A stretch of 64,000 bases of DNA from positions 124,001-188,000 of the IMG/VR virus record IMGVR_UViG_3300036770_004143, one strand, 5' to 3'. Below, piece by piece: positions 23,447-50,665 of this stretch (the stretch's first letter is position 1; every line of letters begins with the position of its first letter). A program made the position numbers and the translations under genes. Below the pieces are notes generated by a model. It did no database searches, was not told where the DNA came from, and was given only the letters and a program-made list of their open reading frames with translations.

Positions 23447-25252
23447 CTATCTATCTTTTTTTATGAATATTTTTTTATAAAACTCTCCATTTCTTGTTAA
23501 GAAATACAACCCAGTTTCAAATATACTTTCCCCCTCATTTAAATTAAATGGTCCAATTCCTTCTAAGACCTTTTGACCCAGAAAATTAAATAAAGCCCAT
23601 CTATCAGATGGTAATATGCTAACATAAACATTGTTATCCCTATTAGTATTATGGATAACTCTATCAGTATATTTTTTATCTTCAATATTTGGACAAATTG
23701 TTATTGTGTCATTGATAATATAAACATTATTTACTTGAAATAAAGTATCAAAACCATTTAATATTCTAAAATTAATCTTATTAAGATAAGGTGATTTTGC
23801 ATTATGCTTCAATGTTAGAGTAAAACAAGAATCTGTTTTTAAACATATAATTGTATCAGTTGATAACTTTTTTACATTCTTATTATATTCAACAACTGTA
23901 ACACCATCTTGTTTTATACTATAATAAAAATCTTCAAAGAACTTATTCTTATCAATTTCTATTTTTATTTTTGAATATGTTGAATCATTTGCATTACAAT
24001 CTCTAGGTGCATCAACAAGTGGCAAACAAATGGCTTCTGAAATGTTTCTTCTTATTTTATTCCCAGGTTGTTCCCCAAACCCCCACTTATAGTTTATACC
24101 CACCTTTGGATTCAAATGACAATATGACATAATAGTTCCCTTTGTATCAGGAGTAACTTCTAACTCTGGACATTTTACTGGTCCAGACTGTTCAACAAAC
24201 CAACAACCATCTAAAGCAGTTCCATTACCATTCCACCAACAAGCATGAGTGTGGGGTGAACCAAGTAAATGACCAATTTCATGGGTCATTACTGTTGTAT
24301 TCCAAGAATAGTTTGGAAATACACCTGTTTCCATATCCAAGCCAGAATAACTTGTTCTCCATTTTGCAATATCACAAAGAGAATGAAGAAAAGCAACACC
24401 TAATCCACTTCTTAAAGAAACTAATTGTCCAAATGTTTCAGGTAATTGATCCTCAGATTTAAATTGGTTGGCAAAGGAATATAACATATTAACTCCATCA
24501 TAATTATAACCACTTGGCCTATCCCATAATTTAAACCTTGCAATTTTAATGTTAACCCCCTCTTTTAAATAAATTAAATGAGTTTGTGCAAATATGTTTT
24601 CAATAAATTTAATAACTTCTTTTCCTGACCCAAGTTTTTCAATCATATCATAATCTGCCTCAAAATACATTGTTATGACTTTGATTTTATTTGATTTTTC
24701 TTGTACATACTCAAACATTGGGGTTTCCTTAAAAAACTCTTCCTCATTTGGTAAAACACATTTAAATTCTTTTGTTTGTTTCACATCTAATTCATGCCAA
24801 ACACCATGAAACCCCTTCTCTACTGGACCAAAAATCCAACCTTCACCATCACCCATAATATAGGTCTGAAAGCTATTATCATTGATTACAATAGATGCAA
24901 ATCCGCTATCATTACCTTGAACCTTTCCAGAATAAATAAGCGATTGTGGTTCATATATAGTATTACATTCAGAATATATTTTGGGGTTATCCACATATAT
25001 TTCCATTTTGGTTAAGTTAAGGATTTTAACACCCTCTGGTGTTGGCAATTGTATTGTTAGAGAATCCAAATCATTATTTATGATTTCCCTAATAATATTT
25101 TTGTTCAATATGAGGGGGGTTGCATAATTGTGTGATGTTGTTCTCAACTCCTTTGAATTTGTTTCAAAGAAAATGGATATAGGTTTATTATTCTGTGAGA
25201 ATAATGAGAATGTTAATATTGAATAAATCAATATTAATTTTAATTTTTTCAT
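23447..25252 (-). CDS. secreted M12/reprolysin-like zinc metalloprotease with T9SS-like C-terminal tail
   Basis: Signal peptide, prodomain, HEIGHLLGSPH, Met-turn TIMSY, FNFLGQKV...GLYFL...KKIFIK tail. Confidence 0.85.
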   Translation of the reverse strand: MKKLKLILIYSILTFSLFSQNNKPISIFFETNSKELRTTSHNYATPLILNKNIIREIINNDLDSLTIQLPTPEGVKILNLTKMEIYVDNPKIYSECNTIYEPQSLIYSGKVQGNDSGFASIVINDNSFQTYIMGDGEGWIFGPVEKGFHGVWHELDVKQTKEFKCVLPNEEEFFKETPMFEYVQEKSNKIKVITMYFEADYDMIEKLGSGKEVIKFIENIFAQTHLIYLKEGVNIKIARFKLWDRPSGYNYDGVNMLYSFANQFKSEDQLPETFGQLVSLRSGLGVAFLHSLCDIAKWRTSYSGLDMETGVFPNYSWNTTVMTHEIGHLLGSPHTHACWWNGNGTALDGCWFVEQSGPVKCPELEVTPDTKGTIMSYCHLNPKVGINYKWGFGEQPGNKIRRNISEAICLPLVDAPRDCNANDSTYSKIKIEIDKNKFFEDFYYSIKQDGVTVVEYNKNVKKLSTDTIICLKTDSCFTLTLKHNAKSPYLNKINFRILNGFDTLFQVNNVYIINDTITICPNIEDKKYTDRVIHNTNRDNNVYVSILPSDRWALFNFLGQKVLEGIGPFNLNEGESIFETGLYFLTRNGEFYKKIFIKKDR

Positions 25253-25256
25253 TTTT

Positions 25257-25883
25257 TTAATTTAGTTTTTTATAAAATTTATTGAAATAGGAAATCCTTG
25301 AATCTAACCCGTGTGTTCCACCATTTACTCTTTTTGTAATTCTTGTAATAATATCTCTTGTTGCACCAAGATCTGCAATCTCATTCAATTTGTTTTTATC
25401 AAAAAACCAACCAGCAGATGCCAATGGATATGTTGTTGCAACTAAATCTGGATTGCCAATTATATCAACATCCATACCTGCCTCATTTAATGATTTATTA
25501 AATAATAAGTAATTATTTTTACCAGTCAATTGTATGTAACCCCTACCTCTGTATTTATACCCTTCAATGCTATCTTCATCACCATTTCCCATTCTATTTG
25601 CATAAACAAGACTTGCAATCTTGGATGGTTTCCTTTCATATAACAATGCTTTTGCGTGTGTGGTAAAATACTTGCCAAAAACCTCTTGTAATCTTTTTGC
25701 TGAATAGTTTAAATTCTCTTGTACAGCAGTAAAATTTCCTGATTCATGAGCGCATTGTGCTAAGAAATGTGCTAACCTTAATTGTGTGTTTATATCATAT
25801 TTTTCATAGATTAAATCAATCTGATTGATGATTGATTCTGGAATAATTCCAATTAATTTTTGCTTGGCACTTGACTGATCCAT
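25257..25883 (-). CDS. GH19 chitinase-like endolysin
   Basis: AHFLAQCAHES, ENLNYS, YRGRGYIQLTG, TKRVNGG. Confidence 0.92.
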   Translation of the reverse strand: MDQSSAKQKLIGIIPESIINQIDLIYEKYDINTQLRLAHFLAQCAHESGNFTAVQENLNYSAKRLQEVFGKYFTTHAKALLYERKPSKIASLVYANRMGNGDEDSIEGYKYRGRGYIQLTGKNNYLLFNKSLNEAGMDVDIIGNPDLVATTYPLASAGWFFDKNKLNEIADLGATRDIITRITKRVNGGTHGLDSRISYFNKFYKKLN

Positions 25884-25959
25884 AATATTTTTATATTTTT
25901 GTTATATATTAGTTATTATTGTATAAATACTGTATTTATTGTTATAAATTATAACAAAT

Positions 25960-26580
25960 ATGGATAATATTACAAAATTAATTAAAGAGAATTTAGAAAA
26001 ATTCACTAATAGAACATTGGTATTAAAGAAAAATGTAAATATATCAGAAGAACTTGAATACCATATTAATGAAAACTTAACATTAACTAATAATGTTTTT
26101 ATGGTTTATTCCAAAAAATACTTTGACTTGATTAATGAGGTTAGAGATTTATGGATGAGAGATTTAATCCAACTAAATGAAGAAGATGAACAAATGGTAA
26201 TGTCAGATACTGGCAAAGTTGCATTATTTGAAGGTGAAATGGTTTATCTTGATGCACCTGTACTTGAAAGTGATGATTTTGATTTCTTAAATGAGGCTGA
26301 ACATAGGGGTAAAAAAGTTAATATAGGAAAACCATTTAGAACTCCTGGTGGACCAAAGAAATTTGCAGTTTATGTTAAAACACCAGGTGGGGGCGTTAAA
26401 AAGGTTACATTTGGTGATCCAAATTTAAAGGTGAGAAATAAAAACAAAGGTGCAGCCAAATCATTTAGAGCAAGACATAAGTGTGACCAAAAGAAAGATA
26501 GAACCACAGCAGGATACTGGTCATGTAATGTGGGCAGATATTCAAAACAACTTGGATTAAAATCTTCAAATAGTTGGTAA
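25960..26580 (+). CDS. leader-bearing phage protein with basic C-terminal domain
   Basis: KKVTFGDP...SFRARHKC...AGYWSC; first gene of the LRR operon; TATTTAT at 25933. Confidence 0.75.
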   Translation: MDNITKLIKENLEKFTNRTLVLKKNVNISEELEYHINENLTLTNNVFMVYSKKYFDLINEVRDLWMRDLIQLNEEDEQMVMSDTGKVALFEGEMVYLDAPVLESDDFDFLNEAEHRGKKVNIGKPFRTPGGPKKFAVYVKTPGGGVKKVTFGDPNLKVRNKNKGAAKSFRARHKCDQKKDRTTAGYWSCNVGRYSKQLGLKSSNSW

Positions 26581-27170
26581 TGGAAAAAGAAGCATTAAAA
26601 AGAATATTTGATTTTCTTGAAGAAAAAGGAGAACATAGGGGTCCATTATTTTGGAAGCATAAAAATAATATACCATTAACAGATGAAGAATTAAATATTG
26701 AAGGTAATTTGGATTTAAGTGATACAAATATAACCTCTTTACCAAAAGGATTGAAAGTTGGTGGTGATTTGGATTTATCATTTTTAAACATAACCTCATT
26801 ACCAGATGGATTGAAAGTTGGTGGTTATTTAAATTTATCATATTCAAACATAACTTCATTACCAGATGAATTGAAAGTTGATGGTAATTTAGGGTTAGCT
26901 TTTTCGCCAATACAAACATTACCAAAAGGATTGAAAGTTGGTGGAACTTTGAATTTGAATAATTGTGATGATATAACCTCATTACCAGAAGGATTAAAAG
27001 TTGGGAAATGGTTCAGTTTATCCGGTTCTAAAATAACTTCCTTACCAAAAGGATTGGAAGTTGGTGATGATTTATTTATAAGTTGGACAACTTTAACCAA
27101 ATACACAGATGATGAATTAAAAAAAATGATTAAACCTGGATTTATAAAAGGTGAGATAGTAAGAAAATAA
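26580..27170 (+). CDS. capped leucine-rich-repeat protein LRR-1 (6 LPxGL-type units)
   Basis: 21-aa repeats; ATG overlaps the upstream TAA. Confidence 0.9.
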   Translation: MEKEALKRIFDFLEEKGEHRGPLFWKHKNNIPLTDEELNIEGNLDLSDTNITSLPKGLKVGGDLDLSFLNITSLPDGLKVGGYLNLSYSNITSLPDELKVDGNLGLAFSPIQTLPKGLKVGGTLNLNNCDDITSLPEGLKVGKWFSLSGSKITSLPKGLEVGDDLFISWTTLTKYTDDELKKMIKPGFIKGEIVRK

Positions 27171-27694
27171 TGAAAAAAGAAACCCTAAAAAGAATATTTG
27201 ATTTTCTTGAAGAAAAGGAAGGGAAATCATCTATTAAATGGAAATTAATTAATGATATACCATTAACAGAAGAAGACTTAAATTTTGAAGGTGATTTATT
27301 TTTAAGAAATTCAAAAATAACCTCATTACCAGAAGGTTTGAAAGTTGGGGGGACATTAAATTTATTCAAATCAAAAATAAAATCATTGCCAGAAGGATTG
27401 AAAGTTGGTGATGATTTGGATTTAAGTGAATCTGATATAGAGTTTTTACCAAAAGGATTGGAAGTTGGGGGTGATTTGTATTTACTTGATACACCCATAA
27501 CTTTTTTACCAGAAGGTTTGAAAGTTGGTGGTTATTTGGATATAAGAGATACAAAAATAACTTCCTTGCCAAAAGGATTGGAAGTTGGGGGTAATTTGTA
27601 TATCTATAGAACACCATTAAAAAAATACACAGATGAACAAATAAGAGAAATGATAAAATCTGGATTTATAAAAGGAAGAATATTTAGGCAATGA
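27170..27694 (+). CDS. LRR-2 (5 units)
   Basis: Same caps and repeats; TAATG coupling. Confidence 0.9.
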   Translation: MKKETLKRIFDFLEEKEGKSSIKWKLINDIPLTEEDLNFEGDLFLRNSKITSLPEGLKVGGTLNLFKSKIKSLPEGLKVGDDLDLSESDIEFLPKGLEVGGDLYLLDTPITFLPEGLKVGGYLDIRDTKITSLPKGLEVGGNLYIYRTPLKKYTDEQIREMIKSGFIKGRIFRQ

Positions 27695-28518
27695 ACAAAG
27701 AAATAGTAAAAAGAGTATTTGATTTTATTGAAAAAGAGGAAGGGCATAAAGTACCATTTTTATGGAAATTATTTAATAATATACCATTAACAAAAGAAGA
27801 TTTAATTGTTAAAGGGGATTTGAATTTAGAAGATTCAGAAATAACCTCATTACCAGAAGGCTTAACAATTGAAGGTGATTTCTTTTTTTATCATACACCT
27901 GTTGAACTACCAAAAGGGTTGAAAGTTGGTGGTAATTTATCTTTAATTGGTCCAAATGTAACCTCATTGCCAAAAGGATTGGAAGTTGGTGGTAGTTTGT
28001 TTGTATCAGATACAGAAATAACCTCACTACCAGAAGGATTGAAAGTTGGGGGTGATTTAGATTTAGCAGATACACAAATAACCTCATTACCAGAAGGATT
28101 TAAAGTTGGGGGTAATTTAAACTTATCACATTCAGAAATAACACGATTACCAAATGATTTGGAAGTCAATGGCAATTTGACTTTAAGTTTTTCAAATATA
28201 ACCACATTACCAAAAGGATTAAAAGTTGGAGGTGATATTAAGTTGTTGGGTTCAAAAATAAGATCCTTACCAGAAGGATTGAAAGTTGTGGGTCGGTTGG
28301 ATTTAAGAGATACCACTATAGGTTCATTACCAAAAGGCTTGGAAGTTGGTGAGAAATTAGCTTTAAATGATTGCAAAAAATTAACTTCATTACCAAAAGG
28401 ATTGAAAGTTGGGGGTGATTTAATTATAATTCGGACAAATTTAACCAAATACACAGATGATGAATTAAAAAAAATGATTGGTTCGGGTTTTATAAATGGT
28501 GAGATAATAAGAATATAA
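27691..28518 (+). CDS. LRR-3 (10 units)
   Basis: ATGA coupling. Confidence 0.9.
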   Translation: MNKEIVKRVFDFIEKEEGHKVPFLWKLFNNIPLTKEDLIVKGDLNLEDSEITSLPEGLTIEGDFFFYHTPVELPKGLKVGGNLSLIGPNVTSLPKGLEVGGSLFVSDTEITSLPEGLKVGGDLDLADTQITSLPEGFKVGGNLNLSHSEITRLPNDLEVNGNLTLSFSNITTLPKGLKVGGDIKLLGSKIRSLPEGLKVVGRLDLRDTTIGSLPKGLEVGEKLALNDCKKLTSLPKGLKVGGDLIIIRTNLTKYTDDELKKMIGSGFINGEIIRI

Positions 28519-28922
28519 TGGAAAAAGAAACATTAAAAAGAATATTTGAATTCCTTGAAGCAAAAGGAGAACAGAGAATACCATTCTTGTGGAAATGGAA
28601 AAATGAAATACCATTAACAGAAGAAGACTTAAATGTTCAAGGTGATTTGGATTTAAGTAATTCAAACATAACCTTATTGCCAGAAGGTTTGAAAGTTAGT
28701 GGTACTTTTGATTTAGGATATTCAAATATAACATCATTATCAGAAGGATTGAAAGTTGGTGATGATTTGTATTTAAGTAATTCAAACCTATCCTCATTAC
28801 CAAAAGGATTGGAAGTTGGGGGTTTTATATTTATATATAATACACCATTAACAGAATACACAAATAATGAATTAAGAGAAATGATTAAGCCTGGATTTAT
28901 AAAAGGAAGAATAATTAGATAA
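28518..28922 (+). CDS. LRR-4 (3 units)
   Basis: TAATG coupling. Confidence 0.9.
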   Translation: MEKETLKRIFEFLEAKGEQRIPFLWKWKNEIPLTEEDLNVQGDLDLSNSNITLLPEGLKVSGTFDLGYSNITSLSEGLKVGDDLYLSNSNLSSLPKGLEVGGFIFIYNTPLTEYTNNELREMIKPGFIKGRIIR

Positions 28923-29395
28923 TGAATATAGAACAACTAAAAAGAATATTTAATTTCCTTGAAGAAAAAGGAGAACAGAGAATACCATTCTTGTGGAAAT
29001 GGAAAAATGAAATACCATTAACTGAAGAAGACTTAAATGTTCAAGGGGACTTGGATTTTTCACAATCAGAAATAGAATCTTTACCAGAAGGATTAAAAAT
29101 TAGTGGTGATTTGGATTTATCCTACACATATATAAGGTCATTACCAAAAGGATTGAAAGTTGGTGGTCATTTGGATTTAACTGAAACAGATATAGAGTTT
29201 TTACCCAAAGGATTGGAAGTTGGGGGTGATTTAATATTAGATGGTTGTGCCAATATAAAAACCTTACCCAAAGGCTTGAAAGTTGGGGGTAATTTGGAAT
29301 TAACAGGTATAACATTAGGTGAAGATTATGATGATGATGAACTAAGAAAAATGATTAAACCTGGATTTATAAAAGGAAGAATTAATGCAGAATGA
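28922..29395 (+). CDS. LRR-5 (4 units)
   Basis: N-cap nearly identical to LRR-4. Confidence 0.9.
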   Translation: MNIEQLKRIFNFLEEKGEQRIPFLWKWKNEIPLTEEDLNVQGDLDFSQSEIESLPEGLKISGDLDLSYTYIRSLPKGLKVGGHLDLTETDIEFLPKGLEVGGDLILDGCANIKTLPKGLKVGGNLELTGITLGEDYDDDELRKMIKPGFIKGRINAE

Positions 29396-29859
29396 AAAAA
29401 GAAGTACTAAAAAGGATATTTGAGTTCCTTGAAGAGAAGGAAGGACATAATTTACCATTCTTATGGAAGTTGATGTCTAATGAACCATTAACAGAAGAAG
29501 AATTAAATGTTAAAGGTCATTTGACTTTAAGTAATAAAGGAATAGAAACATTACCAAAAGGATTGAAAGTTAGAGGTGATTTGGATTTGCAAGATTCCTC
29601 TATAAAATCATTACCAGAAGGATTGAAAGTTAGGGGTAATTTGATTTTAATTGATACACCCATAACTTTTTTACCAAAAGGGTTAGAAGTTGGCGGTTAT
29701 TTGGATATAAGATATACAAAAATAACCTCCTTACCAAAAGGATTGGAAGTTGGTGCTACTTTATATATTAAAAATACAGCATTATTAGAATACACAGATG
29801 AAGAATTAAAAGAAATGGTTAAACCTGGAATTTTAGCAAGAAGAATATATAGAGAATGA
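29392..29859 (+). CDS. LRR-6 (4 units)
   Basis: ATGA coupling. Confidence 0.9.
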   Translation: MKKEVLKRIFEFLEEKEGHNLPFLWKLMSNEPLTEEELNVKGHLTLSNKGIETLPKGLKVRGDLDLQDSSIKSLPEGLKVRGNLILIDTPITFLPKGLEVGGYLDIRYTKITSLPKGLEVGATLYIKNTALLEYTDEELKEMVKPGILARRIYRE

Positions 29860-30260
29860 AAAAAGAAGTACTAAAAAGGATATTTGAGTTCCTTGAAGAG
29901 AAGGAAAATAAAAATCCACCATTTATATGGAAATATGAAAATAATCTACCATTAACAAAAGAAGAATTAAATGTTGAAGGTGATTTGAGTTTGGTTCAAT
30001 CAAATATAGAATCATTACCAGAAGGATTGAAAGTTGGGCGTGATTTGGATATTTTTGGTTCAAAAATAACCTCATTACCAAAAGGATTAGAAGTTGGGCG
30101 TTTTTTGGATATAAGAGATACAAAAATAACCTCCTTGCCAAAAGGACTAGAACTTGGTAGTAGTTTGTATATTAGACATACAGCATTAGTAAAATATTCA
30201 GATGAAGAATTACAAGATATGGTTAAACCTGGATTTATAAATGGAATAATACATAGATAA
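29856..30260 (+). CDS. LRR-7 (3 units)
   Basis: First 17 codons identical to LRR-6. Confidence 0.9.
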   Translation: MKKEVLKRIFEFLEEKENKNPPFIWKYENNLPLTKEELNVEGDLSLVQSNIESLPEGLKVGRDLDIFGSKITSLPKGLEVGRFLDIRDTKITSLPKGLELGSSLYIRHTALVKYSDEELQDMVKPGFINGIIHR

Positions 30261-30535
30261 TGGAAAAAGAAACATTACCATTCAAACAAGAAAATAAAGA
30301 AGGGAAATTGATTAGAGAGTTTAGTCAATTTGTTGATATTGAAGAATTACATTGGCATAGAGATAGAACAAATAGAGAGGTTAAGATAATCCAGGGTGGA
30401 GGATGGAAATACCAAAGCTGGGATGCTTTACCTATTAAACTAAAAAATAATGACACTATATCCATACCAAAAGGGTTATGGCATAGAGTTATTAAGGGTG
30501 ACGAACCCCTAATTGTAGAAATAACTGAATTATGA
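30260..30535 (+). CDS. cupin-fold protein
   Basis: WHRD...IPKGLWHRVIKG; starts MEKETL like LRR-4. Confidence 0.75.
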   Translation: MEKETLPFKQENKEGKLIREFSQFVDIEELHWHRDRTNREVKIIQGGGWKYQSWDALPIKLKNNDTISIPKGLWHRVIKGDEPLIVEITEL

Positions 30536-31701
30536 AAAAACAAATGAATGAGGCTAGGGGTGTCCCAGCAGGCATCACTAATTATGCCACAAAAATATTT
30601 AATGATGTATTAGAAAAATTAAAAAGTAATAAATTTAAAAGACAATCTCCATTTGATACGTATAGTGCAGTTGTAGATGCACCAGGTAAATTCTTAAAAG
30701 ATGATAAACCAGTTCAAATTAGTAAAATAAAGGTTAATATAAATTTTGACTTTTATCCTAGTTCTGATATAAAAAAAATAATAGCAGCCAACCCCAAAGT
30801 TAAAACAAAAACAGATAAATTATTATTGACTGGTTTGGGTATGGAGTTTTTTTTAACAAAAGACTTAACAAAAAATTATAACTTAAAAGTTGCTTCAACT
30901 GAAAACCCAATTTTACATATTAATTTTGTAGCAAGTGAAGATTTAAATGATATTGAAAATAATGTGTATAAGTTATTAAATGATAATTATGATACTTTTT
31001 TAAGTACATTTGGTCATGAAATTCAACATCATATTAATATGGAGGCAAAAGGGGAAGATGATATAGCATTACGAACAAAATATAGAGTAGTTTCAAATCC
31101 AAGTGATGTTACAGAGTATAAATCATTAAGTGATTTTGTATTTAATTTATATTATCTTTCACTAATTGAAAATATTGTTAGACCTACTGAGTTAAAAACT
31201 ACATTAGATAATAAAAAGGTAACAAAAAAACAATTTCAACAAGTTTATTATGATTCTGAAATGTATCATAAATTTGAGATATGTGAGAATACAACATATG
31301 AAAAATTATGCAATGAATTGCTAAAAGATTTAGAAAAATCTTTACCGCCTATAATATTTAAACATAAAACTAAATCTGAGATTATAGAAATAATGTTAAC
31401 AAAAACCTTTATTAATATGATTGATGAAGGTGCAAGTTTTTTGAAAATGGCTATTTTTGATAAAATGCCTAATGCTCCCATAGATGAAATAGATAGTGTT
31501 TTTAACAACAAATTTGAAGTTTTTTTGAAAAAACATATGTTTATCAAATACAAACCAAGTAAGGATATATATGGTGAAAAGGATTTAGATGTTGAAAAAA
31601 CATATAGATCCTTAATAAAAGACATGAATATTACAGCAACTAAAATGAAGAAAAAAATTGCTAAATTATATGAAGATTTACCATATGAGTATGAGAATTA
31701 A
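30532..31701 (+). CDS. HExxH zincin-like protein (paralog A)
   Basis: FGHEIQHH...IENIVRPTE; MKKQMNE N-terminus. Confidence 0.65.
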   Translation: MKKQMNEARGVPAGITNYATKIFNDVLEKLKSNKFKRQSPFDTYSAVVDAPGKFLKDDKPVQISKIKVNINFDFYPSSDIKKIIAANPKVKTKTDKLLLTGLGMEFFLTKDLTKNYNLKVASTENPILHINFVASEDLNDIENNVYKLLNDNYDTFLSTFGHEIQHHINMEAKGEDDIALRTKYRVVSNPSDVTEYKSLSDFVFNLYYLSLIENIVRPTELKTTLDNKKVTKKQFQQVYYDSEMYHKFEICENTTYEKLCNELLKDLEKSLPPIIFKHKTKSEIIEIMLTKTFINMIDEGASFLKMAIFDKMPNAPIDEIDSVFNNKFEVFLKKHMFIKYKPSKDIYGEKDLDVEKTYRSLIKDMNITATKMKKKIAKLYEDLPYEYEN

Positions 31702-31737
31702 AAAATAAATTGTATTTTTGCAAAAAAAACAAAAGAT

Positions 31738-31863
31738 ATGTACATTGTTAACATTAGAATACCAGATGATTTGAAAGGTAAAGTAAAGATAAACTTACCT
31801 GAACAAATAAAGATAAGAGAAACTAAAGAAAAAAGTTTGAAAGTAGAAATAACCAAATCATGA
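31738..31863 (+). CDS. 41-aa peptide (paralog of 33010-33126)
   Basis: MYIVNIRIPDDLKGKVKINLPEQIKIRETKEKSLKVEITKS; TATTTTTG promoter. Confidence 0.6.
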   Translation: MYIVNIRIPDDLKGKVKINLPEQIKIRETKEKSLKVEITKS

Positions 31864-32978
31864 GAAAACAAATGAATGAGGCTAGGGGAGTTCCAGAGGG
31901 ACTTACTAGTTATGCAAAAAAAATATTAGATAAATTTTTAGAAGATTTAAATAGCCCTTTTCCTAATAAAACCACAGTTGTTAATATACCAGGTACTTTT
32001 TTTAAAAATGATAAAACACTTCAAATTAATGATGTAAGTGTTCTTATAAATTTAAAATTTTATACTAGCCAGCAAATTAAGGCAATTGTAAAGGCTAACC
32101 CCCATATTAAAGAAAAAAGTGATGAATTACTGTTGAGTAGTTTAGGTATGCGGTTTGACATAGACAATAACCTAACAAAAAATTATAATTTAAAAATTTT
32201 CAAGAGTGAAAGTCCAACTATTACTATTAATTTTTTAGCAAGTAGAGATATACAAGAAGTTTATAAAAAGATATACATAATATTAAAAGATAATTACGCT
32301 AGATTTTTAGATTCATTTGGACATGAACTTAAGCATTTTATTGATAACCAATTAAAAGTTGAAAAGGATATAGCATTAAGCGCAAAGTATCAAGTAGTTT
32401 CACAGGCAAGAAATTTTACTGATAGTCAAACATTAATTGATTTTTTCTTTGATGTATATTACCTTTCATCAATTGAAAATCTTGTTAGACCTTCTGAGTT
32501 AAAAACAAAATTGGATAATGAGAATATAACAAAAAAAGATTTTAAGGAAATTTATTATAATTCTAAAATGTATAAAAAGTTTGATTTTTGTCAAAATATG
32601 ACATATGAAAAATTATACAATAATTTGGGGGAAGAGTTAGCAACAAAAGTATCCCCTGAAAAATTTAGTAAATCTAAAGATAAACTTATATCAAATGAAT
32701 TAAGTAAAACCATAAGAAAAATGATTGCTAGTGGTAAAGATTACTTAAAAACAATGATTCCTATCTCAAAAGGGGATATATCTATAACAAATGCTTATTT
32801 AAGCAAGTTTAAGAGTTTTTTAAAAAATCATTTATTTATTAAATATGCTTCAAATCAGGTTATAGATACAGAAAAAACATATAGAGCAATAATAAAAGAT
32901 ATGAATGCTACAGCAATTAAAATGAAGAAAAAAATTGCTAAATTATATGAAGATGTGCCAGATAATTATGAATCATAA
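31860..32978 (+). CDS. HExxH zincin-like protein (paralog B)
   Basis: FGHELKHF...IENLVRPSE; alignable end-to-end with paralog A. Confidence 0.65.
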   Translation: MRKQMNEARGVPEGLTSYAKKILDKFLEDLNSPFPNKTTVVNIPGTFFKNDKTLQINDVSVLINLKFYTSQQIKAIVKANPHIKEKSDELLLSSLGMRFDIDNNLTKNYNLKIFKSESPTITINFLASRDIQEVYKKIYIILKDNYARFLDSFGHELKHFIDNQLKVEKDIALSAKYQVVSQARNFTDSQTLIDFFFDVYYLSSIENLVRPSELKTKLDNENITKKDFKEIYYNSKMYKKFDFCQNMTYEKLYNNLGEELATKVSPEKFSKSKDKLISNELSKTIRKMIASGKDYLKTMIPISKGDISITNAYLSKFKSFLKNHLFIKYASNQVIDTEKTYRAIIKDMNATAIKMKKKIAKLYEDVPDNYES

Positions 32979-34346: not shown

Positions 34347-34982
34347 ATGGCTTATTTGAATGCAAACATACCAACTATTACTTGTCTAATTAGGAATGAA
34401 TTTTTATTCAATCATAAATCAGGCTTTAATGAATATACCCCAGCTGATGTACATTCAGTTGCATCTATTCAAAAGAGAGTTCCATTATTTGAAGCATTTT
34501 TAGACAACGGAGTAAATTGGACCCGTAGGCCTATTCACTCCTTTGTATGGAAGGAAGGGGCAGAAGTATTACCTTTATCTGAACATATGTATTGGGATTG
34601 TTTCTCGTCATATATAGATGTAAATGTAAGAGAAAGGTTAGCAGGTCTTAGAGCTGACTTAATATCAATAACTGGTGTTAAACGTTTAGGAACATATATG
34701 TTTACACTTGATTGGTCACATGAAAATAGAAATGTTATTGATACTAATTTTTCTGAAACCCCAGAACATAAATGTGGGCATCTTTTTAAGATGGATAATG
34801 GGAACTATTTCATATATCCAAACAATAGAATTATTTGGATGGATACCGCTTGGACTTATAATAGGATAGACAAAAATCCTGGGTATAAGATAGATATGAA
34901 TGTCTATTCAGTAGAAAATATGAGTGGATATGCAACAGATTATAATTATATAACTAATTTTACAAAAGATGGAAAAGACTGA
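34347..34982 (+). CDS. conserved hypothetical phage protein
   Basis: YWDCFS, YMFTLDW, EHKCGH, YPNNRI motifs; function unknown. Confidence 0.75.
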   Translation: MAYLNANIPTITCLIRNEFLFNHKSGFNEYTPADVHSVASIQKRVPLFEAFLDNGVNWTRRPIHSFVWKEGAEVLPLSEHMYWDCFSSYIDVNVRERLAGLRADLISITGVKRLGTYMFTLDWSHENRNVIDTNFSETPEHKCGHLFKMDNGNYFIYPNNRIIWMDTAWTYNRIDKNPGYKIDMNVYSVENMSGYATDYNYITNFTKDGKD

Positions 34983-35376
34983 TATTATATATAATATATT
35001 AAATAATACAAAATTAAAATTAAAACCATCTAAGGTATGCAATGGAGTTGGTGTATTTAGTATTTGCAAAATAAAAAAAGATGAGAAACTATTTTCAGAT
35101 GTAACTGTTGATACAATGTATATATCTTGGGATGATCTTAAAGGTATTCCTAAATCTACTGAATCCTATTTAAGAACTATAGCAAACGTTGCTGATGGGG
35201 GGATTTATTTGTCAAGAACACCTAATAACATAAATCTATCATATTATGTAAATCATTCAAATAAGCCAAATGTTTTTCACAACTTAGATACAGATGAATT
35301 TTATGCTATATGTGATATTGATGAAGATGAAGAAATTTTATGCACTTACACTGATTTAGAAATTGATTGGGAATAG
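34969..35376 (+). CDS. SET-domain protein (lysine methyltransferase fold)
   Basis: GVGVFS...YVNHSNKPN...EEILCTY. Confidence 0.85.
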   Translation: MEKTDIIYNILNNTKLKLKPSKVCNGVGVFSICKIKKDEKLFSDVTVDTMYISWDDLKGIPKSTESYLRTIANVADGGIYLSRTPNNINLSYYVNHSNKPNVFHNLDTDEFYAICDIDEDEEILCTYTDLEIDWE

Positions 35377-35410
35377 GTATTATGATATTTAACACAAAAA
35401 AACTAAAAAT

Positions 35411-35689
35411 ATGGATAACTTTAGATTAGGTAAGGAAATAAATATAACTGGATTAAGCAAGAAAAGCACAATTAGTGTTCCTTATCATATTCTTGAACAT
35501 ACCTTTGGAGTGCCAACCATTATTGAAGATAATAATTATGCAATCTGGAAATTAAGGTTTGAGGATACAGAAGAATCTATTGCAATACTAAATGATAATG
35601 AGAATTATCTTGAAACAAATAAATGGTTTGTTAAAGCACATAATTCAAAGGGTATTGAAAGAGTAAAAAACATTTTATCAAGTATTTAA
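35411..35689 (+). CDS. hypothetical protein
   Basis: 92-aa ORF. Confidence 0.65.
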   Translation: MDNFRLGKEINITGLSKKSTISVPYHILEHTFGVPTIIEDNNYAIWKLRFEDTEESIAILNDNENYLETNKWFVKAHNSKGIERVKNILSSI

Positions 35690-35920: not shown

Positions 35921-35995
35921 CGCAGGGTCGTATAAGGGTTAGTATATTGGGCTCATAACCCAGAGATATAGGTTCGAGTCCTATCTCTGCAACCA
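35921..35995 (+). tRNA. tRNA-fMet (CAT)
   Basis: C1:A72 mismatch, GGG/CCC anticodon stem, GTTCGAG T-loop, encoded CCA. Confidence 0.9.
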
Positions 35996-45986: not shown

Positions 45987-46060
45987 GGATCTGTAGCTCA
46001 GTTGGTAGCAGCAAAACGCTCATAACGTTGAGGTCGCAAGTTCAAGTCTTGCCAGATCCA
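45987..46060 (+). tRNA. tRNA-CAT (Ile2/lysidine or elongator Met)
   Basis: GGATCTG/CAGATCC acceptor stem, CTCATAA loop; lacks initiator hallmarks. Confidence 0.85.
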
Positions 46061-46074
46061 CAACATTATTAATT

Positions 46075-50011: not shown

Positions 50012-50068
50012 TAACTTGTTTTAAAACCTGGAGGGTTATTAAAATATAACTTGATTAAAAAAAATATA

Positions 50069-50665
50069 ATGGAAAAAGAAGCATTAAAAAGAATGTTAGA
50101 GTTCTTTGAAAAAAAAGAAAATTATAGAATACCACTTAGTTTTAAACTTAAAAACAATGAACCAATAACAAAAGAAGATTTATATGTTAAAGGTGATTTG
50201 AAAATTGTCAATGGTTTTAATTTAACATCATTACCAGAAGGATTAAATGTTGGTGCTTTGCGGTTATTAAATTGCAATAATTTAACCTCATTACCAAAAG
50301 ATTTAAATGTTCGTGGTGATTTGTATTTATCAGATATGCCTATAACCTCATTACCAGAAGGATTGAAAAAAGTTTTTAGTTTATCTCTAGTTAGTTGCCC
50401 TAATTTTTCCTCATTACCAAAAGGTTTGGAAATTGAGGGTCCTTTTATTTTATTGATGTGTCCAAATTTAATATCATTACCGGAAAGATTTAGAGTTGGT
50501 CATAATTGTTTATTATCTTCTTCAAATATAACTTCATTACCAAAAGGCTTGGAAGTTTATGGTGATTTATTTATTAAGAATACAGCATTAACAAAATACA
50601 CAGATGAAAAATTAAGAGAAATGATTAAGCCTGGGTTTATAGGTGGAAAAATAATTAGACAATGA
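50069..50665 (+). CDS. LRR-8, displaced member of the LRR family (6 units)
   Basis: Same N-cap MEKEALKR.. and C-cap LTKYTDEKLREMIKPGFI. Confidence 0.9.
   Translation: MEKEALKRMLEFFEKKENYRIPLSFKLKNNEPITKEDLYVKGDLKIVNGFNLTSLPEGLNVGALRLLNCNNLTSLPKDLNVRGDLYLSDMPITSLPEGLKKVFSLSLVSCPNFSSLPKGLEIEGPFILLMCPNLISLPERFRVGHNCLLSSSNITSLPKGLEVYGDLFIKNTALTKYTDEKLREMIKPGFIGGKIIRQ

What the first reader, a model, noticed from the sequence alone, without database searches (positions are those of the whole stretch)
26580..30260. VLR-like repertoire: seven coupled, capped LRR genes built from shuffled 63-bp modules
Seen: seven genes are joined by TAATG/ATGA overlaps. Each has a conserved N-cap (MxKExLKRIFxFLEEK..PLTxExL), 3-10 units of a 21-aa repeat (6,5,10,3,4,4,3) and a conserved C-cap (YTDxELxxMIKPGFIxGxI). 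The scaffold core (TTACCAxAAGGATTGxAAGTTGG) is nearly invariant in DNA, while the residues around the LxL strand vary widely. The genes are mosaics. DIEFLPKGLEVGGDL is shared by genes 2 and 5; DTPITFLP..VGGYLDIR.TKITSLP by 2 and 6; LDIRDTKITSLPKGLE by 2 and 7; N-caps by 4/5 and 6/7; and LTKYTDDELKKMI by 1 and 3. Known: the LxxLxL strands form the concave ligand-binding face of LRR solenoids, and lamprey VLRs diversify by module assembly between fixed caps. Inference: the phage keeps a recombining library of small binders, for example against host defence proteins or receptors, using the invariant core as the recombination handle.
Basis: partly seen in the sequence, partly recalled or inferred. 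Interest (0 to 1): 0.85.

Follow-up and report, generated by a model that had tools for sequence, protein, structure and literature searches.

The report
Mosaic mini-LRR gene arrays in phage
A large uncultured T4-like phage carries at least 36 small leucine-rich-repeat "binder" genes in coupled arrays (seven of them here) that swap whole repeat cassettes and change quickly between related phages, but what they bind is still unknown.

Summary
The seven coupled, capped repeat genes are real. The unit is 20 aa/60 bp, not 21 aa/63 bp.

**Structure.** AlphaFold gives a confident LRR solenoid (pLDDT 91). The closest solved relative is Vibrio FlrP, then the IpaH/SspH1/SlrP LRR domains. VLRs match only distantly.

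**Scale.** The array is one of at least seven in a contig of at least 270 kb from a T4-like phage. At least 36 capped paralogs with 177 modules take up about 7% of that contig. About 1,500 related protein clusters exist in metagenomes. None turned up in 185,579 cellular genomes or in cultured phages.

**Mosaicism is shown.**
- N-cap and C-cap trees reject each other (AU p = 5e-12 and 5e-4).
- A close relative has a rearranged 5-gene array with chimeric genes.
- Ends of high-identity tracts cluster at gene junctions, not in the module core.

**Selection.** Hypervariable positions have dN/dS of about 0.95, against 0.35 for scaffold positions. That is unconstrained, not proven positive selection.

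**Not supported.** There is no evidence of VLR-type somatic assembly or DGR mutagenesis.

**Best reading.** This is a germline family of cytoplasmic mini-LRR binders evolving by birth-and-death and cassette recombination. They probably target variable host proteins. The function is untested.

The parts
25960..26580 (+). Upstream gene (206 aa, phrog_7595, function unknown). It is the first gene of the + strand unit, and its stop overlaps the start of LRR gene 1 (TAATG).
26580..27170 (+). LRR gene 1 (D1): 196 aa. N-cap of 41 aa, 6 modules (one of 21 aa), C-cap of 34 aa.
27170..27694 (+). LRR gene 2 (D2): 174 aa, 5 modules. AlphaFold model with pLDDT 91. Absent from relative L008.
27691..28518 (+). 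LRR gene 3 (D3): 275 aa, 10 modules (one of 19 aa, one of 21 aa). Its 3' half is kept at 97-100% in relative L008, inside a chimeric gene.
28518..28922 (+). LRR gene 4 (D4): 134 aa, 3 modules. Its N-cap is nearly identical to that of gene 5 (57 identical nt).
28922..29395 (+). LRR gene 5 (D5): 157 aa, 4 modules (one of 21 aa).
29392..29859 (+). LRR gene 6 (D6): 155 aa, 4 modules. Absent from L008, but found without differences in contigs of two other samples.
29856..30260 (+). LRR gene 7 (D7): 134 aa, 3 modules. 99% identical in L008.
30260..30535 (+). Downstream gene (91 aa, no family). Its start overlaps the stop of gene 7, and the same coupled operon continues.
50069..50665 (+). Eighth, solitary family member in the window (E1): about 198 aa, both caps, 4 modules. 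The start codon is uncertain (TTG at 50051 or ATG at 50069).

Best explanation
The seven genes are one array of a phage-restricted multigene family of small, cytoplasmic, capped leucine-rich-repeat proteins. Each protein has a helical N-cap, 3-10 or more copies of a 20-aa bacterial-type LRR unit (G-x-L-x-L-x-x-T/S-x-I-x-x-L-P-x-G-L-x-V-G) and a 34-aa C-cap.

**Shown**
- The fold.
- The family size: at least 36 copies in at least seven coupled arrays in a T4-like phage contig of at least 270 kb.
- The restriction to viral and metagenomic sequence.
- Variability concentrated at the positions flanking the LxL strand.
- An evolutionary mode of gene birth and death plus homologous recombination or gene conversion among paralogs. 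Whole repeat cassettes are exchanged preferentially at the conserved DNA around gene junctions (C-cap tail and N-terminal helix), and less often inside the repeat region.

**Inferred**
- The proteins are made together from long, translationally coupled operons.
- Each uses its variable strand face to bind a different, or a variable, host protein. The targets could be host takeover targets or defence proteins.
- The repertoire is re-assorted on evolutionary time scales, among co-circulating phages. It is not re-assorted by a programmed mechanism within one infection.
For: - **Fold.** AlphaFold2 pLDDT 91.2 and pTM 0.83, with two short strands per 20-aa turn.
- **Structure matches.** Foldseek and profile hits to FlrP (8z5u chain 0, E = 3e-35), SlrP, SspH1, IpaH and Leptospira LRRs.
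- **Family size.** About 1,492 protein clusters share both caps. There are 205 distinct capped genes in 76 viral loci. Atlas neighbours are unnamed clusters that are 97-100% viral.
- **Restriction to phages.** No capped relative in 185,579 cellular species genomes. No capped member in 50,697 GenBank phage records.
- **Copies in this genome.** 36 paralogs, 177 modules and 6,502 aa.
- **Cytoplasmic.** All N-termini are highly charged, Cys is rare and pI ranges from 4.4 to 9.4.
- **Variable positions.**
- **Selection.** dN/dS is 0.95 at variable positions, 0.35 at scaffold positions and 0.5-0.6 in the caps.
- **Recombination.** Mantel r = -0.13 between N-cap and C-cap distances, and only 1 of 36 genes has the same nearest neighbour at both ends. 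AU tests give 5e-12 and 5e-4, and 171 of 177 modules have their nearest relative in another gene.
- **Turnover.** The relative has chimeric genes, changed order and different gene numbers in all three syntenic arrays.
- **Exchange points.** Tract ends are enriched at gene junctions.
- **Operon structure.** No terminator-like sites in 25200-32000, and overlapping stops and starts.
- **Independent hint.** An uncapped homologue in phage Edno5 lies in the early-left accessory operon.
Against: - No binding partner, timing or phenotype is known.
- Expression evidence is limited to low-depth contigs in one RNA library that may contain DNA.
- dN/dS of about 1 fits relaxed constraint as well as diversifying selection.
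- The two phages compared are mosaic over their whole length. The arrays are therefore variable patches in a plastic genome, and not demonstrably faster than every other region.
- Arrays B and C lie near the capsid gene, so a virion role is not excluded.
- Cap segments are short (about 100-125 nt), and tract ends can only be placed to within about 20 nt.
Confidence: 0.6

Rival explanations
1. The proteins are virion-associated host-recognition or decoration proteins. The conserved caps dock the proteins onto the particle or onto each other, and the variable LRR faces bind host surface structures. This would resemble the paralogous DUF7941 'fibre cloud' proteins of phage Goslar, some of which carry LRR or beta-helix domains.
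For: - The Goslar study describes conserved-module paralogs with variable LRR or carbohydrate-binding parts in the virion.
- Arrays B and C flank the Gp23 capsid gene.
- Rapid turnover is also typical of receptor-binding proteins.
- The closest solved relative, FlrP, is a structural spacer bound to a large machine.
Against: - There is no anchor, trimerisation or fibre domain. The proteins are only caps plus 3-10 repeats.
- Other arrays sit among replication and metabolic genes: PolB, an SNF2 helicase, RNA ligase and a PfkB kinase.
- Caps never occur on non-LRR proteins in 76 loci.
- The pI spread of 4.4-9.4 is unusual for one shared docking site, though not decisive.
Confidence: 0.15
2. The proteins are packaged in the head and injected with the DNA, like T4 internal proteins. 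The conserved N-terminal amphipathic helix would act as a capsid-targeting sequence that the prohead protease removes, and the LRR body would neutralise host defences on entry.
For: - The phage is T4-like. It has a Gp23 capsid, and the related contig L002 has an S77 prohead protease.
- The first ~16 residues are the most conserved part of the protein, yet they are modelled with the lowest confidence (pLDDT 57-66).
- The helix contains L/I-x-E motifs. That T4 protease sites look like this is recalled from my own knowledge and was not tested.
Against: - The motif is short and common.
- The helix may simply be the structural N-cap.
- No cleavage or packaging data exist.
- 36 different cargo proteins would be unprecedented.
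Confidence: 0.1
3. Diversification is programmed: VLR-like copy-choice assembly, or DGR-type mutagenic retrohoming, acting during the phage life cycle.
For: - Fixed caps with variable modules resemble VLR architecture.
- Scaffold DNA is unusually uniform.
Against: - All genes are complete ORFs.
- The array is 100% identical in three contigs from different samples.
- Differences at the variable positions show no adenine bias: 71% involve A, the same as elsewhere.
- The 'joints' in laid contigs are explained by the 36 or more paralogs.
- Only 6 of 177 modules have their nearest relative in the same gene.
Confidence: 0.03
4. The family is a neutrally expanding repeat family with no specific targets. 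It would be selfish or filler DNA in the plastic periphery of a large phage genome.
For: - dN/dS is about 1 at many positions.
- Gain and loss are rapid.
- The whole genome is mosaic.
Against: - Scaffold positions are under purifying selection (dN/dS 0.35).
- No member in 205 distinct genes lacks the reading frame.
- Caps and fold are conserved across phages with about 45-60% identity.
- The family takes up about 7% of the coding capacity.
Confidence: 0.07

Closest known systems
FlrP of Vibrio alginolyticus (PDB 8z5u chain 0; bioRxiv 10.64898/2025.12.04.692373)
   Same: It has the same 20-aa repeat subtype (LPxGLxVGGxLxL). The profile E-value is 3e-35, and Foldseek gives about 35% identity over 164 columns. 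It acts as a protein-binding beta-solenoid.
   Different: FlrP is a cellular, Sec-exported periplasmic protein present as a single gene. It lacks the phage N- and C-caps (only repeat positions 42-151 align), and it is a structural spacer on the flagellar rod.
LRR domains of the bacterial NEL effectors IpaH, SspH1/2 and SlrP, and YopM-type short LRRs
   Same: They have a 20-residue bacterial LRR class and a similar fold (TM about 0.5, profile E-values 1e-8 to 1e-10). The LRR face is used to recognise target proteins of the attacked cell.
   Different: The phage proteins have no NEL ligase domain and no secretion signal. They end 34 aa after the last repeat. The second half of the repeat (LPxGLxVGG) differs from the LPxLPxx of those effectors.
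Variable lymphocyte receptors of lampreys and hagfish
   Same: They are capped LRR binders with a variable number of modules and variable strand residues. Weak profile and fold matches exist (E 1e-6, TM about 0.4-0.5).
   Different: VLRs are assembled somatically from cassettes into an incomplete gene. Their caps are disulfide-bonded, their modules have 24 aa, and they are secreted or membrane-bound. Here the genes are complete germline genes, the caps are cysteine-poor and helical, the modules have 20 aa, and the proteins are cytoplasmic.
Multigene families of repeat proteins in large eukaryotic viruses (poxvirus ankyrin/PRANC proteins; ankyrin, LRR and FNIP expansions in giant viruses, PMC5753266)
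   Same: There are many paralogs of a repeat-protein binder in tandem arrays. Copy number scales with genome size, turnover between strains is rapid, and a host-interaction role is presumed.
   Different: Those viruses infect eukaryotes, and their proteins often carry an adaptor domain such as an F-box. Giant-virus LRRs match this model only weakly (TM 0.4-0.5, E above 1e-3). No such family was found described for phages.
TAL effector repeat arrays (own knowledge, not tested here)
   Same: The repeat DNA is nearly identical apart from a few specificity codons, and repeats recombine to give new specificities.
   Different: TAL effectors have 34-aa helical repeats that bind DNA. They are single long proteins rather than many short capped genes.

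Membership tests
Leucine-rich repeat superfamily (short bacterial class) | Tandem units of 20-29 aa with the LxLxxN/TxLxxLP core | tested here: met
   35 units of 20 aa (three of 21, one of 19) with L3, L5, T/S8, I10, L13 and P14 conserved. TRF period is 60 bp.
Leucine-rich repeat superfamily (short bacterial class) | Curved solenoid with a parallel beta-sheet, similar to solved LRR structures | tested here: met
   AlphaFold2 pLDDT 91.2. Foldseek probability is 1.0 to many LRR structures. The profile search hits 50 PDB LRR sequences.
Leucine-rich repeat superfamily (short bacterial class) | Passes curated Pfam LRR thresholds | tested here: not met
   The best hit is LRR_1 at 19.1 bits against a cut-off of 20.6. 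All other hits are further below their cut-offs. This is why the family is mostly unannotated.
Variable lymphocyte receptors (VLR) | Incomplete germline gene completed by somatic insertion of flanking LRR cassettes | tested here: not met
   All seven genes are complete ORFs with start, both caps and stop. The same array is found in three independent contigs.
Variable lymphocyte receptors (VLR) | Cysteine-rich LRRNT/LRRCT caps and 24-aa LRRV modules | tested here: not met
   The caps are helical, most paralogs have 0-2 Cys per protein, and the modules have 20 aa.
Variable lymphocyte receptors (VLR) | AID/APOBEC-like deaminase-dependent assembly | not tested
   The rest of the genome was not searched for a deaminase.
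NEL E3-ligase effectors (IpaH/SspH/SlrP) | C-terminal NEL catalytic domain | tested here: not met
   Only 33-35 aa follow the last repeat. Matches to SlrP and SspH2 cover the LRR part alone, far below the cut-offs.
FlrP-type periplasmic LRR | Sec signal peptide and periplasmic location | tested here: not met
   All 36 paralogs have at least 6 charged residues in the first 20 aa. FlrP has a signal peptide at M1-A19.
DGR variable proteins | Variation restricted to adenine positions of a template repeat | tested here: not met
   71% of differences involve A, both at variable positions and elsewhere.
DGR variable proteins | Nearby reverse transcriptase and template repeat | not tested
   The Pfam and PHROGs scans of selected ORFs gave no RT hit. 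No systematic RT search was made.
T4-type internal proteins | Conserved N-terminal capsid-targeting sequence cleaved by the prohead protease, and presence in heads | not testable with these tools
   The conserved N-terminal helix contains L/I-x-E motifs. This is only a resemblance recalled from memory.

The most novel reading that the evidence does not exclude
The family is a germline combinatorial binder repertoire, the phage counterpart of an immune-receptor repertoire. Each mini-LRR would neutralise a different host defence or takeover target. Cassettes would be traded among co-infecting phages at the conserved gene-junction DNA. The extreme uniformity of scaffold codons (for example Val19 GTT in 661 of 661 modules) would be maintained because it keeps cassettes and modules exchangeable.
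Probability: 0.2. Interest if true: 0.9.

Novelty: new variant of a known kind. Interest (0 to 1): 0.66.

Why it matters
If these proteins bind host factors, this would be the first phage example of something known from poxviruses, giant viruses and bacterial effectors: a large, rapidly re-assorting family of repeat-protein binders aimed at the host.

It would also offer a natural library of very small (134-275 aa), cysteine-poor, cytoplasmically folding LRR scaffolds. The variable positions are known, which is useful for finding new anti-defence proteins and for binder engineering.

The family-wide conservation of synonymous codons gives a measurable case for studying concerted evolution against selection for recombinability. 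None of the roughly 1,500 protein clusters has a functional name, so one solved partner would annotate a large block of viral dark matter.

Tried and rejected
- **Laying contigs of four runs on the array.** Logan unitigs break inside the repeats, and the many 'joints' can all come from the 36 or more paralogs. There is no usable evidence on within-population rearrangement. The RNA evidence is too thin to call expression.
- **First breakpoint test at gene level.** It excluded ends within 45 nt of gene ends and found only 8 events. It was replaced by the locus-level test.
- **An earlier reading of mine, withdrawn.** I had read the 97-100% LRR blocks as more identical than the flanks, implying very recent exchange. 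A sliding-window comparison showed the flanks are mostly 94-100% identical with divergent patches.
- **Promoter and terminator scan.** Promoter-like sites are fewer than in shuffles and there are no terminators. It is uninformative beyond supporting one long operon.
- **PADLOC, NCBIfam and PHROGs.** No functional family. There are only sub-threshold matches to the LRR parts of effectors, plus one unknown PHROG.
- **Caps on non-LRR proteins.** None found, so the caps are not a portable tag.
- **DGR-type adenine bias.** Absent.
- **Literature searches for a described phage LRR multigene family.** Nothing found.
- **Model coordinates.** None are held. Assigning the variable positions to the concave face therefore rests on the DSSP string and general LRR geometry.

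Full report
**1. What is there**

The region holds seven + strand ORFs: 26580-27170, 27170-27694, 27691-28518, 28518-28922, 28922-29395, 29392-29859 and 29856-30260.
- Every junction is a TAATG or ATGA stop/start overlap.
- The gene before the array (25960-26580) and the gene after it (30260-30535) are joined in the same way.
- The unit is 20 aa/60 bp, not 21 aa/63 bp. Three units carry one extra residue in an 'xxC' loop variant, and one unit lacks a residue.
- All peptide strings said to be shared between gene pairs are present as stated.
- Antisense ORFs of up to 187 aa inside the array are a by-product of the periodic, stop-free repeat sequence.

**2. Fold and nearest relatives**

Pfam gives only sub-threshold LRR matches, which explains why the family is unannotated.
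- An AlphaFold2 model of gene 2, built on 21 homologues, is confident (pLDDT 91.2, pTM 0.83). It is a solenoid with two short strands per 20-aa turn, at module positions 3-4 and 18-19.
- The best solved match by fold and by profile is 8z5u chain 0 (E = 3e-35, about 35% identity). After it come the LRR domains of SlrP, SspH1 and IpaH, Leptospira LRRs and designed LRRs. VLRs and repebodies rank lower.
- 8z5u chain 0 is FlrP, a Sec-exported periplasmic LRR that binds the rod of the Vibrio polar flagellar motor. It shares the repeat subtype but not the caps.
- In the viral structure library the top hits are family members auto-named 'Leucine-rich repeat [uncultured Caudovirales phage]'. Giant-virus LRRs are far weaker.

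**3. Scale and distribution**

A search with gene 2 returned about 1,492 protein clusters covering the whole length, caps included. Almost none has a name.
- ESM Atlas neighbours are unnamed clusters that are 97-100% viral.
- A cap-pattern scan of 185,579 bacterial and archaeal species genomes confirmed no relative (sensitivity is limited to the two cap patterns used).
- Among 50,697 GenBank phage records, only uncapped LRR matches appeared. One is Edwardsiella phage Edno5, where the gene sits in the early-left accessory operon between CI and exo/recT.
- In IMG/VR the window is 100% identical to parts of contigs of 200.8 and 270.1 kb.
- In the parts of that genome that I fetched there are 36 capped paralogs in arrays of 8, 5, 3, 7 (this finding), 1 (window 50069-50665), 9 and 3 genes. 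Together they hold 177 modules and 6,502 aa, about 7% of the 270-kb contig, and this is a lower bound.
- The phage has a T4-type Gp23 capsid protein. The nearest cultured capsids are from Microcystis and Flavobacterium phages at about 42% identity, so the host is unknown.
- The arrays lie in mixed neighbourhoods: DNA polymerase B and an SNF2 helicase, the capsid gene, a PfkB kinase, and (for this array) an endolysin-like GH19, an M12B-like peptidase and an RNA ligase.

**4. Variable and constant positions**

Across the 35 local modules, L3, L5, I10, L13, P14, G16, L17 and V19 are nearly fixed. Positions 2, 4, 6, 7 and 9 have 2.5-3.1 bits of entropy, and positions 15 and 18 toggle between K and E. 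The 177 modules of the genome show the same pattern.

By standard LRR geometry and the DSSP string, positions 2, 4, 6 and 7 flank or lie on the LxL strand of the concave face. This assignment is an inference, because no coordinates were available.

On 54 independent pairs of close relatives, NG86 dN/dS is as follows:

| Partition | dN/dS |
|---|---|
| Hypervariable positions | 0.95 |
| Semi-variable positions | 0.92 |
| Scaffold positions | 0.35 |
| N-cap | 0.61 |
| C-cap | 0.52 |

The variable face is therefore unconstrained or diversifying. Positive selection is not demonstrated, and the estimate ignores recombination. The paralogs span pI 4.4-9.4, all have highly charged N-termini, and most have 0-2 cysteines. 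This fits cytoplasmic proteins with different surfaces.

**5. Mosaicism within the genome**
- Among the 36 paralogs, N-cap and C-cap distances are uncorrelated (Mantel r = -0.13, p = 0.88). Only one gene has the same nearest relative at both ends.
- For example, A4 and A7 differ by 1.6% in the N-cap but rank 29th-31st of 35 in the C-cap.
- The N-cap data reject the C-cap tree (AU p = 5e-12), and the C-cap data reject the N-cap tree (AU p = 5e-4).
- 171 of 177 modules have their nearest relative in another gene, and 121 of those are in another array.
- B2 and B5 share modules 1-2 at 100% although their N-caps differ by 8.9%.

**6. Comparison with a close relative**

Contig IMGVR_UViG_3300037502_002729 (L008) is syntenic on both sides of the array, but it has five genes of 155, 256, 196, 157 and 134 aa instead of seven. 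Painting them against the window shows the following:
- A gene-1 body whose first ~10 codons and C-cap tail come from elsewhere.
- A chimera of a novel 5' half with the 3' half of gene 3.
- A gene-5 body with a different N-cap.
- Gene 7, nearly unchanged.
- One gene with no close counterpart.
- Genes 2, 4 and 6 are missing, and the gene-3-like gene precedes the gene-1-like gene.

The retained junction 'gene-3 end / gene-4 start' in front of a gene-1 body is what an unequal crossover between the N-cap DNA of genes 1 and 4 would produce (inference).

Arrays B and C also differ in gene number and order. Only 9 of the relative's 19 members have a counterpart at 95% identity or more.

One caution applies. 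The flanks are themselves patchy: mostly 94-100% identical, with patches of 66-81% and replaced segments. The arrays are therefore variable patches in a generally mosaic genome, and the conserved LRR blocks are no more similar than the backbone.

**7. Where exchange happens**

Across all fetched loci I mapped 36 distinct ends of tracts that are at least 200 nt long and at least 97% identical and that fall inside family genes.
- 25 lie in the first ~15 codons of the N-cap or the last ~10 codons of the C-cap, against 14.6 expected from length.
- 10 lie in modules, against 19 expected (chi-square p = 0.0014).
- Whole repeat cassettes bounded by gene junctions are thus the favoured unit, and intra-repeat crossovers also occur.
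- Resolution is about 20 nt. Ends necessarily fall at the first variable site beyond a conserved stretch, so use of the module core is not excluded. It is not the main handle.

**8. Codon uniformity**

Scaffold codons are position-specific and conserved far beyond codon bias, including in members from other phages:

| Position | Codon | Share of modules | Background |
|---|---|---|---|
| Val19 | GTT | 100% (661 modules) | 63% |
| Ile10 | ATA | 93% | 35-39% |
| Pro14 | CCA | 96% | 58-65% |
| Leu3 | TTG | 67-74% | 18-25% |
| Gly16 | GGA | 59-69% | 23-27% |

Conserved cap residues behave the same way (Phe12 TTC 74%, Thr34 ACA 94%). The effect therefore runs through the whole family and is not a property of the core alone.

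The simplest account is concerted evolution. With about 180 modules and 36 caps per genome, conversion from the majority erases new synonymous changes. Selection on the DNA or mRNA itself cannot be excluded. This remains unexplained in detail.

**9. Mechanisms excluded or unlikely**
- VLR-type assembly fails every defining feature that could be tested (see the membership table).
- DGR mutagenesis is not supported. Differences involve adenine equally often (71%) at variable and other positions.
- Laid contigs gave no interpretable evidence of rearrangement within a population. They gave only faint presence in one RNA library: a 489-nt contig over gene 5 at 96% identity and depth about 4-5.

**10. 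Function**

Nothing tested here shows what the proteins bind. The following points favour a set of intracellular binders aimed at variable host proteins (host takeover or counter-defence):
- The lack of export signals.
- The minimal architecture of caps plus repeats.
- The diversity of surfaces.
- The placement in long coupled operons among non-structural genes.
- The early-operon position of the Edno5 homologue.
- The rapid turnover.

Rivals are a virion-surface recognition role, as proposed for conserved-module paralogs of phage Goslar, and packaging as injected internal proteins. Neither is excluded.

**11. Verdict**
- The VLR label, the 'core as handle' mechanism and positive selection are not supported.
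- I found no description of such a phage family in the literature searched.
- I rate it a new variant of a known kind (viral multigene families of repeat-protein binders), with interest 0.66.

Noticed in passing
window 35921-35995 and 45987-46061 (tRNA genes): ARAGORN calls two tRNA-Met(CAT) genes, plus tRNA-Pro and tRNA-Ile(GAT). One CAT tRNA could be a lysidine-type tRNA-Ile2 that reads ATA. ATA is the codon used at Ile10 in 93% of LRR modules, about 180 per genome. This is speculative.
   Followed up: no
window 50069-50665 (+): A solitary eighth member of the same capped LRR family lies about 20 kb downstream of the array. The finding does not mention it.
   Followed up: partly
window 23447-25252 (-) and 25257-25883 (-): A 601-aa protein with reprolysin-like (M12B) metallopeptidase domains sits next to a GH19 chitinase-like (endolysin-type) gene. 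Both are transcribed divergently from the LRR operon. An M12B peptidase is unusual in a phage.
   Followed up: no
window 30532-31701 (+): This 389-aa ORF has no family match. It is only about 66-81% identical between the window and relative L008, while its neighbours are 94-100% identical. It is another fast-evolving patch right after the array.
   Followed up: no
window 34454-35654 against L008: This segment is replaced or unalignable between the two related phages. L008 also has an insertion at about window 21854. Mosaicism is genome-wide and not confined to the LRR arrays.
   Followed up: partly
window 26465-28936 (- strand ORFs, e.g. 27891-28454): Long antisense ORFs of up to 187 aa run through the repeats with a periodic PPTFNPFGNEV-like translation. 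They are most likely artefacts of the stop-free periodic sequence, not genes.
   Followed up: no
L002/L003/L004 (contigs Ga0453895_0000190 and k141_435409) and L021: Contigs from other samples share the gene order around array B (ORFs of 680, 500 and 500 aa upstream, the Gp23 capsid downstream), but their LRR genes differ in number and length. They are further natural variants for comparing arrays.
   Followed up: partly
paralogs G3 and A4 of the same genome (L012 and L016): Two paralogs carry strongly acidic Asp/Glu/Tyr-rich C-terminal extensions (net charge -16). These are reminiscent of DNA-mimic tails.
   Followed up: no
BFVD hits A0A8S5TKP0, A0A8S5TLH1, A0A8S5TKI2 (Podoviridae sp. ctz6O13): These are phage proteins of 443-519 aa auto-named 'E3 ubiquitin-protein ligase' or 'SspH2'. 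Their LRR part resembles this family (27-31% identity over the aligned part, TMq 0.54-0.68). Whether they really carry a ligase domain was not checked.
   Followed up: no
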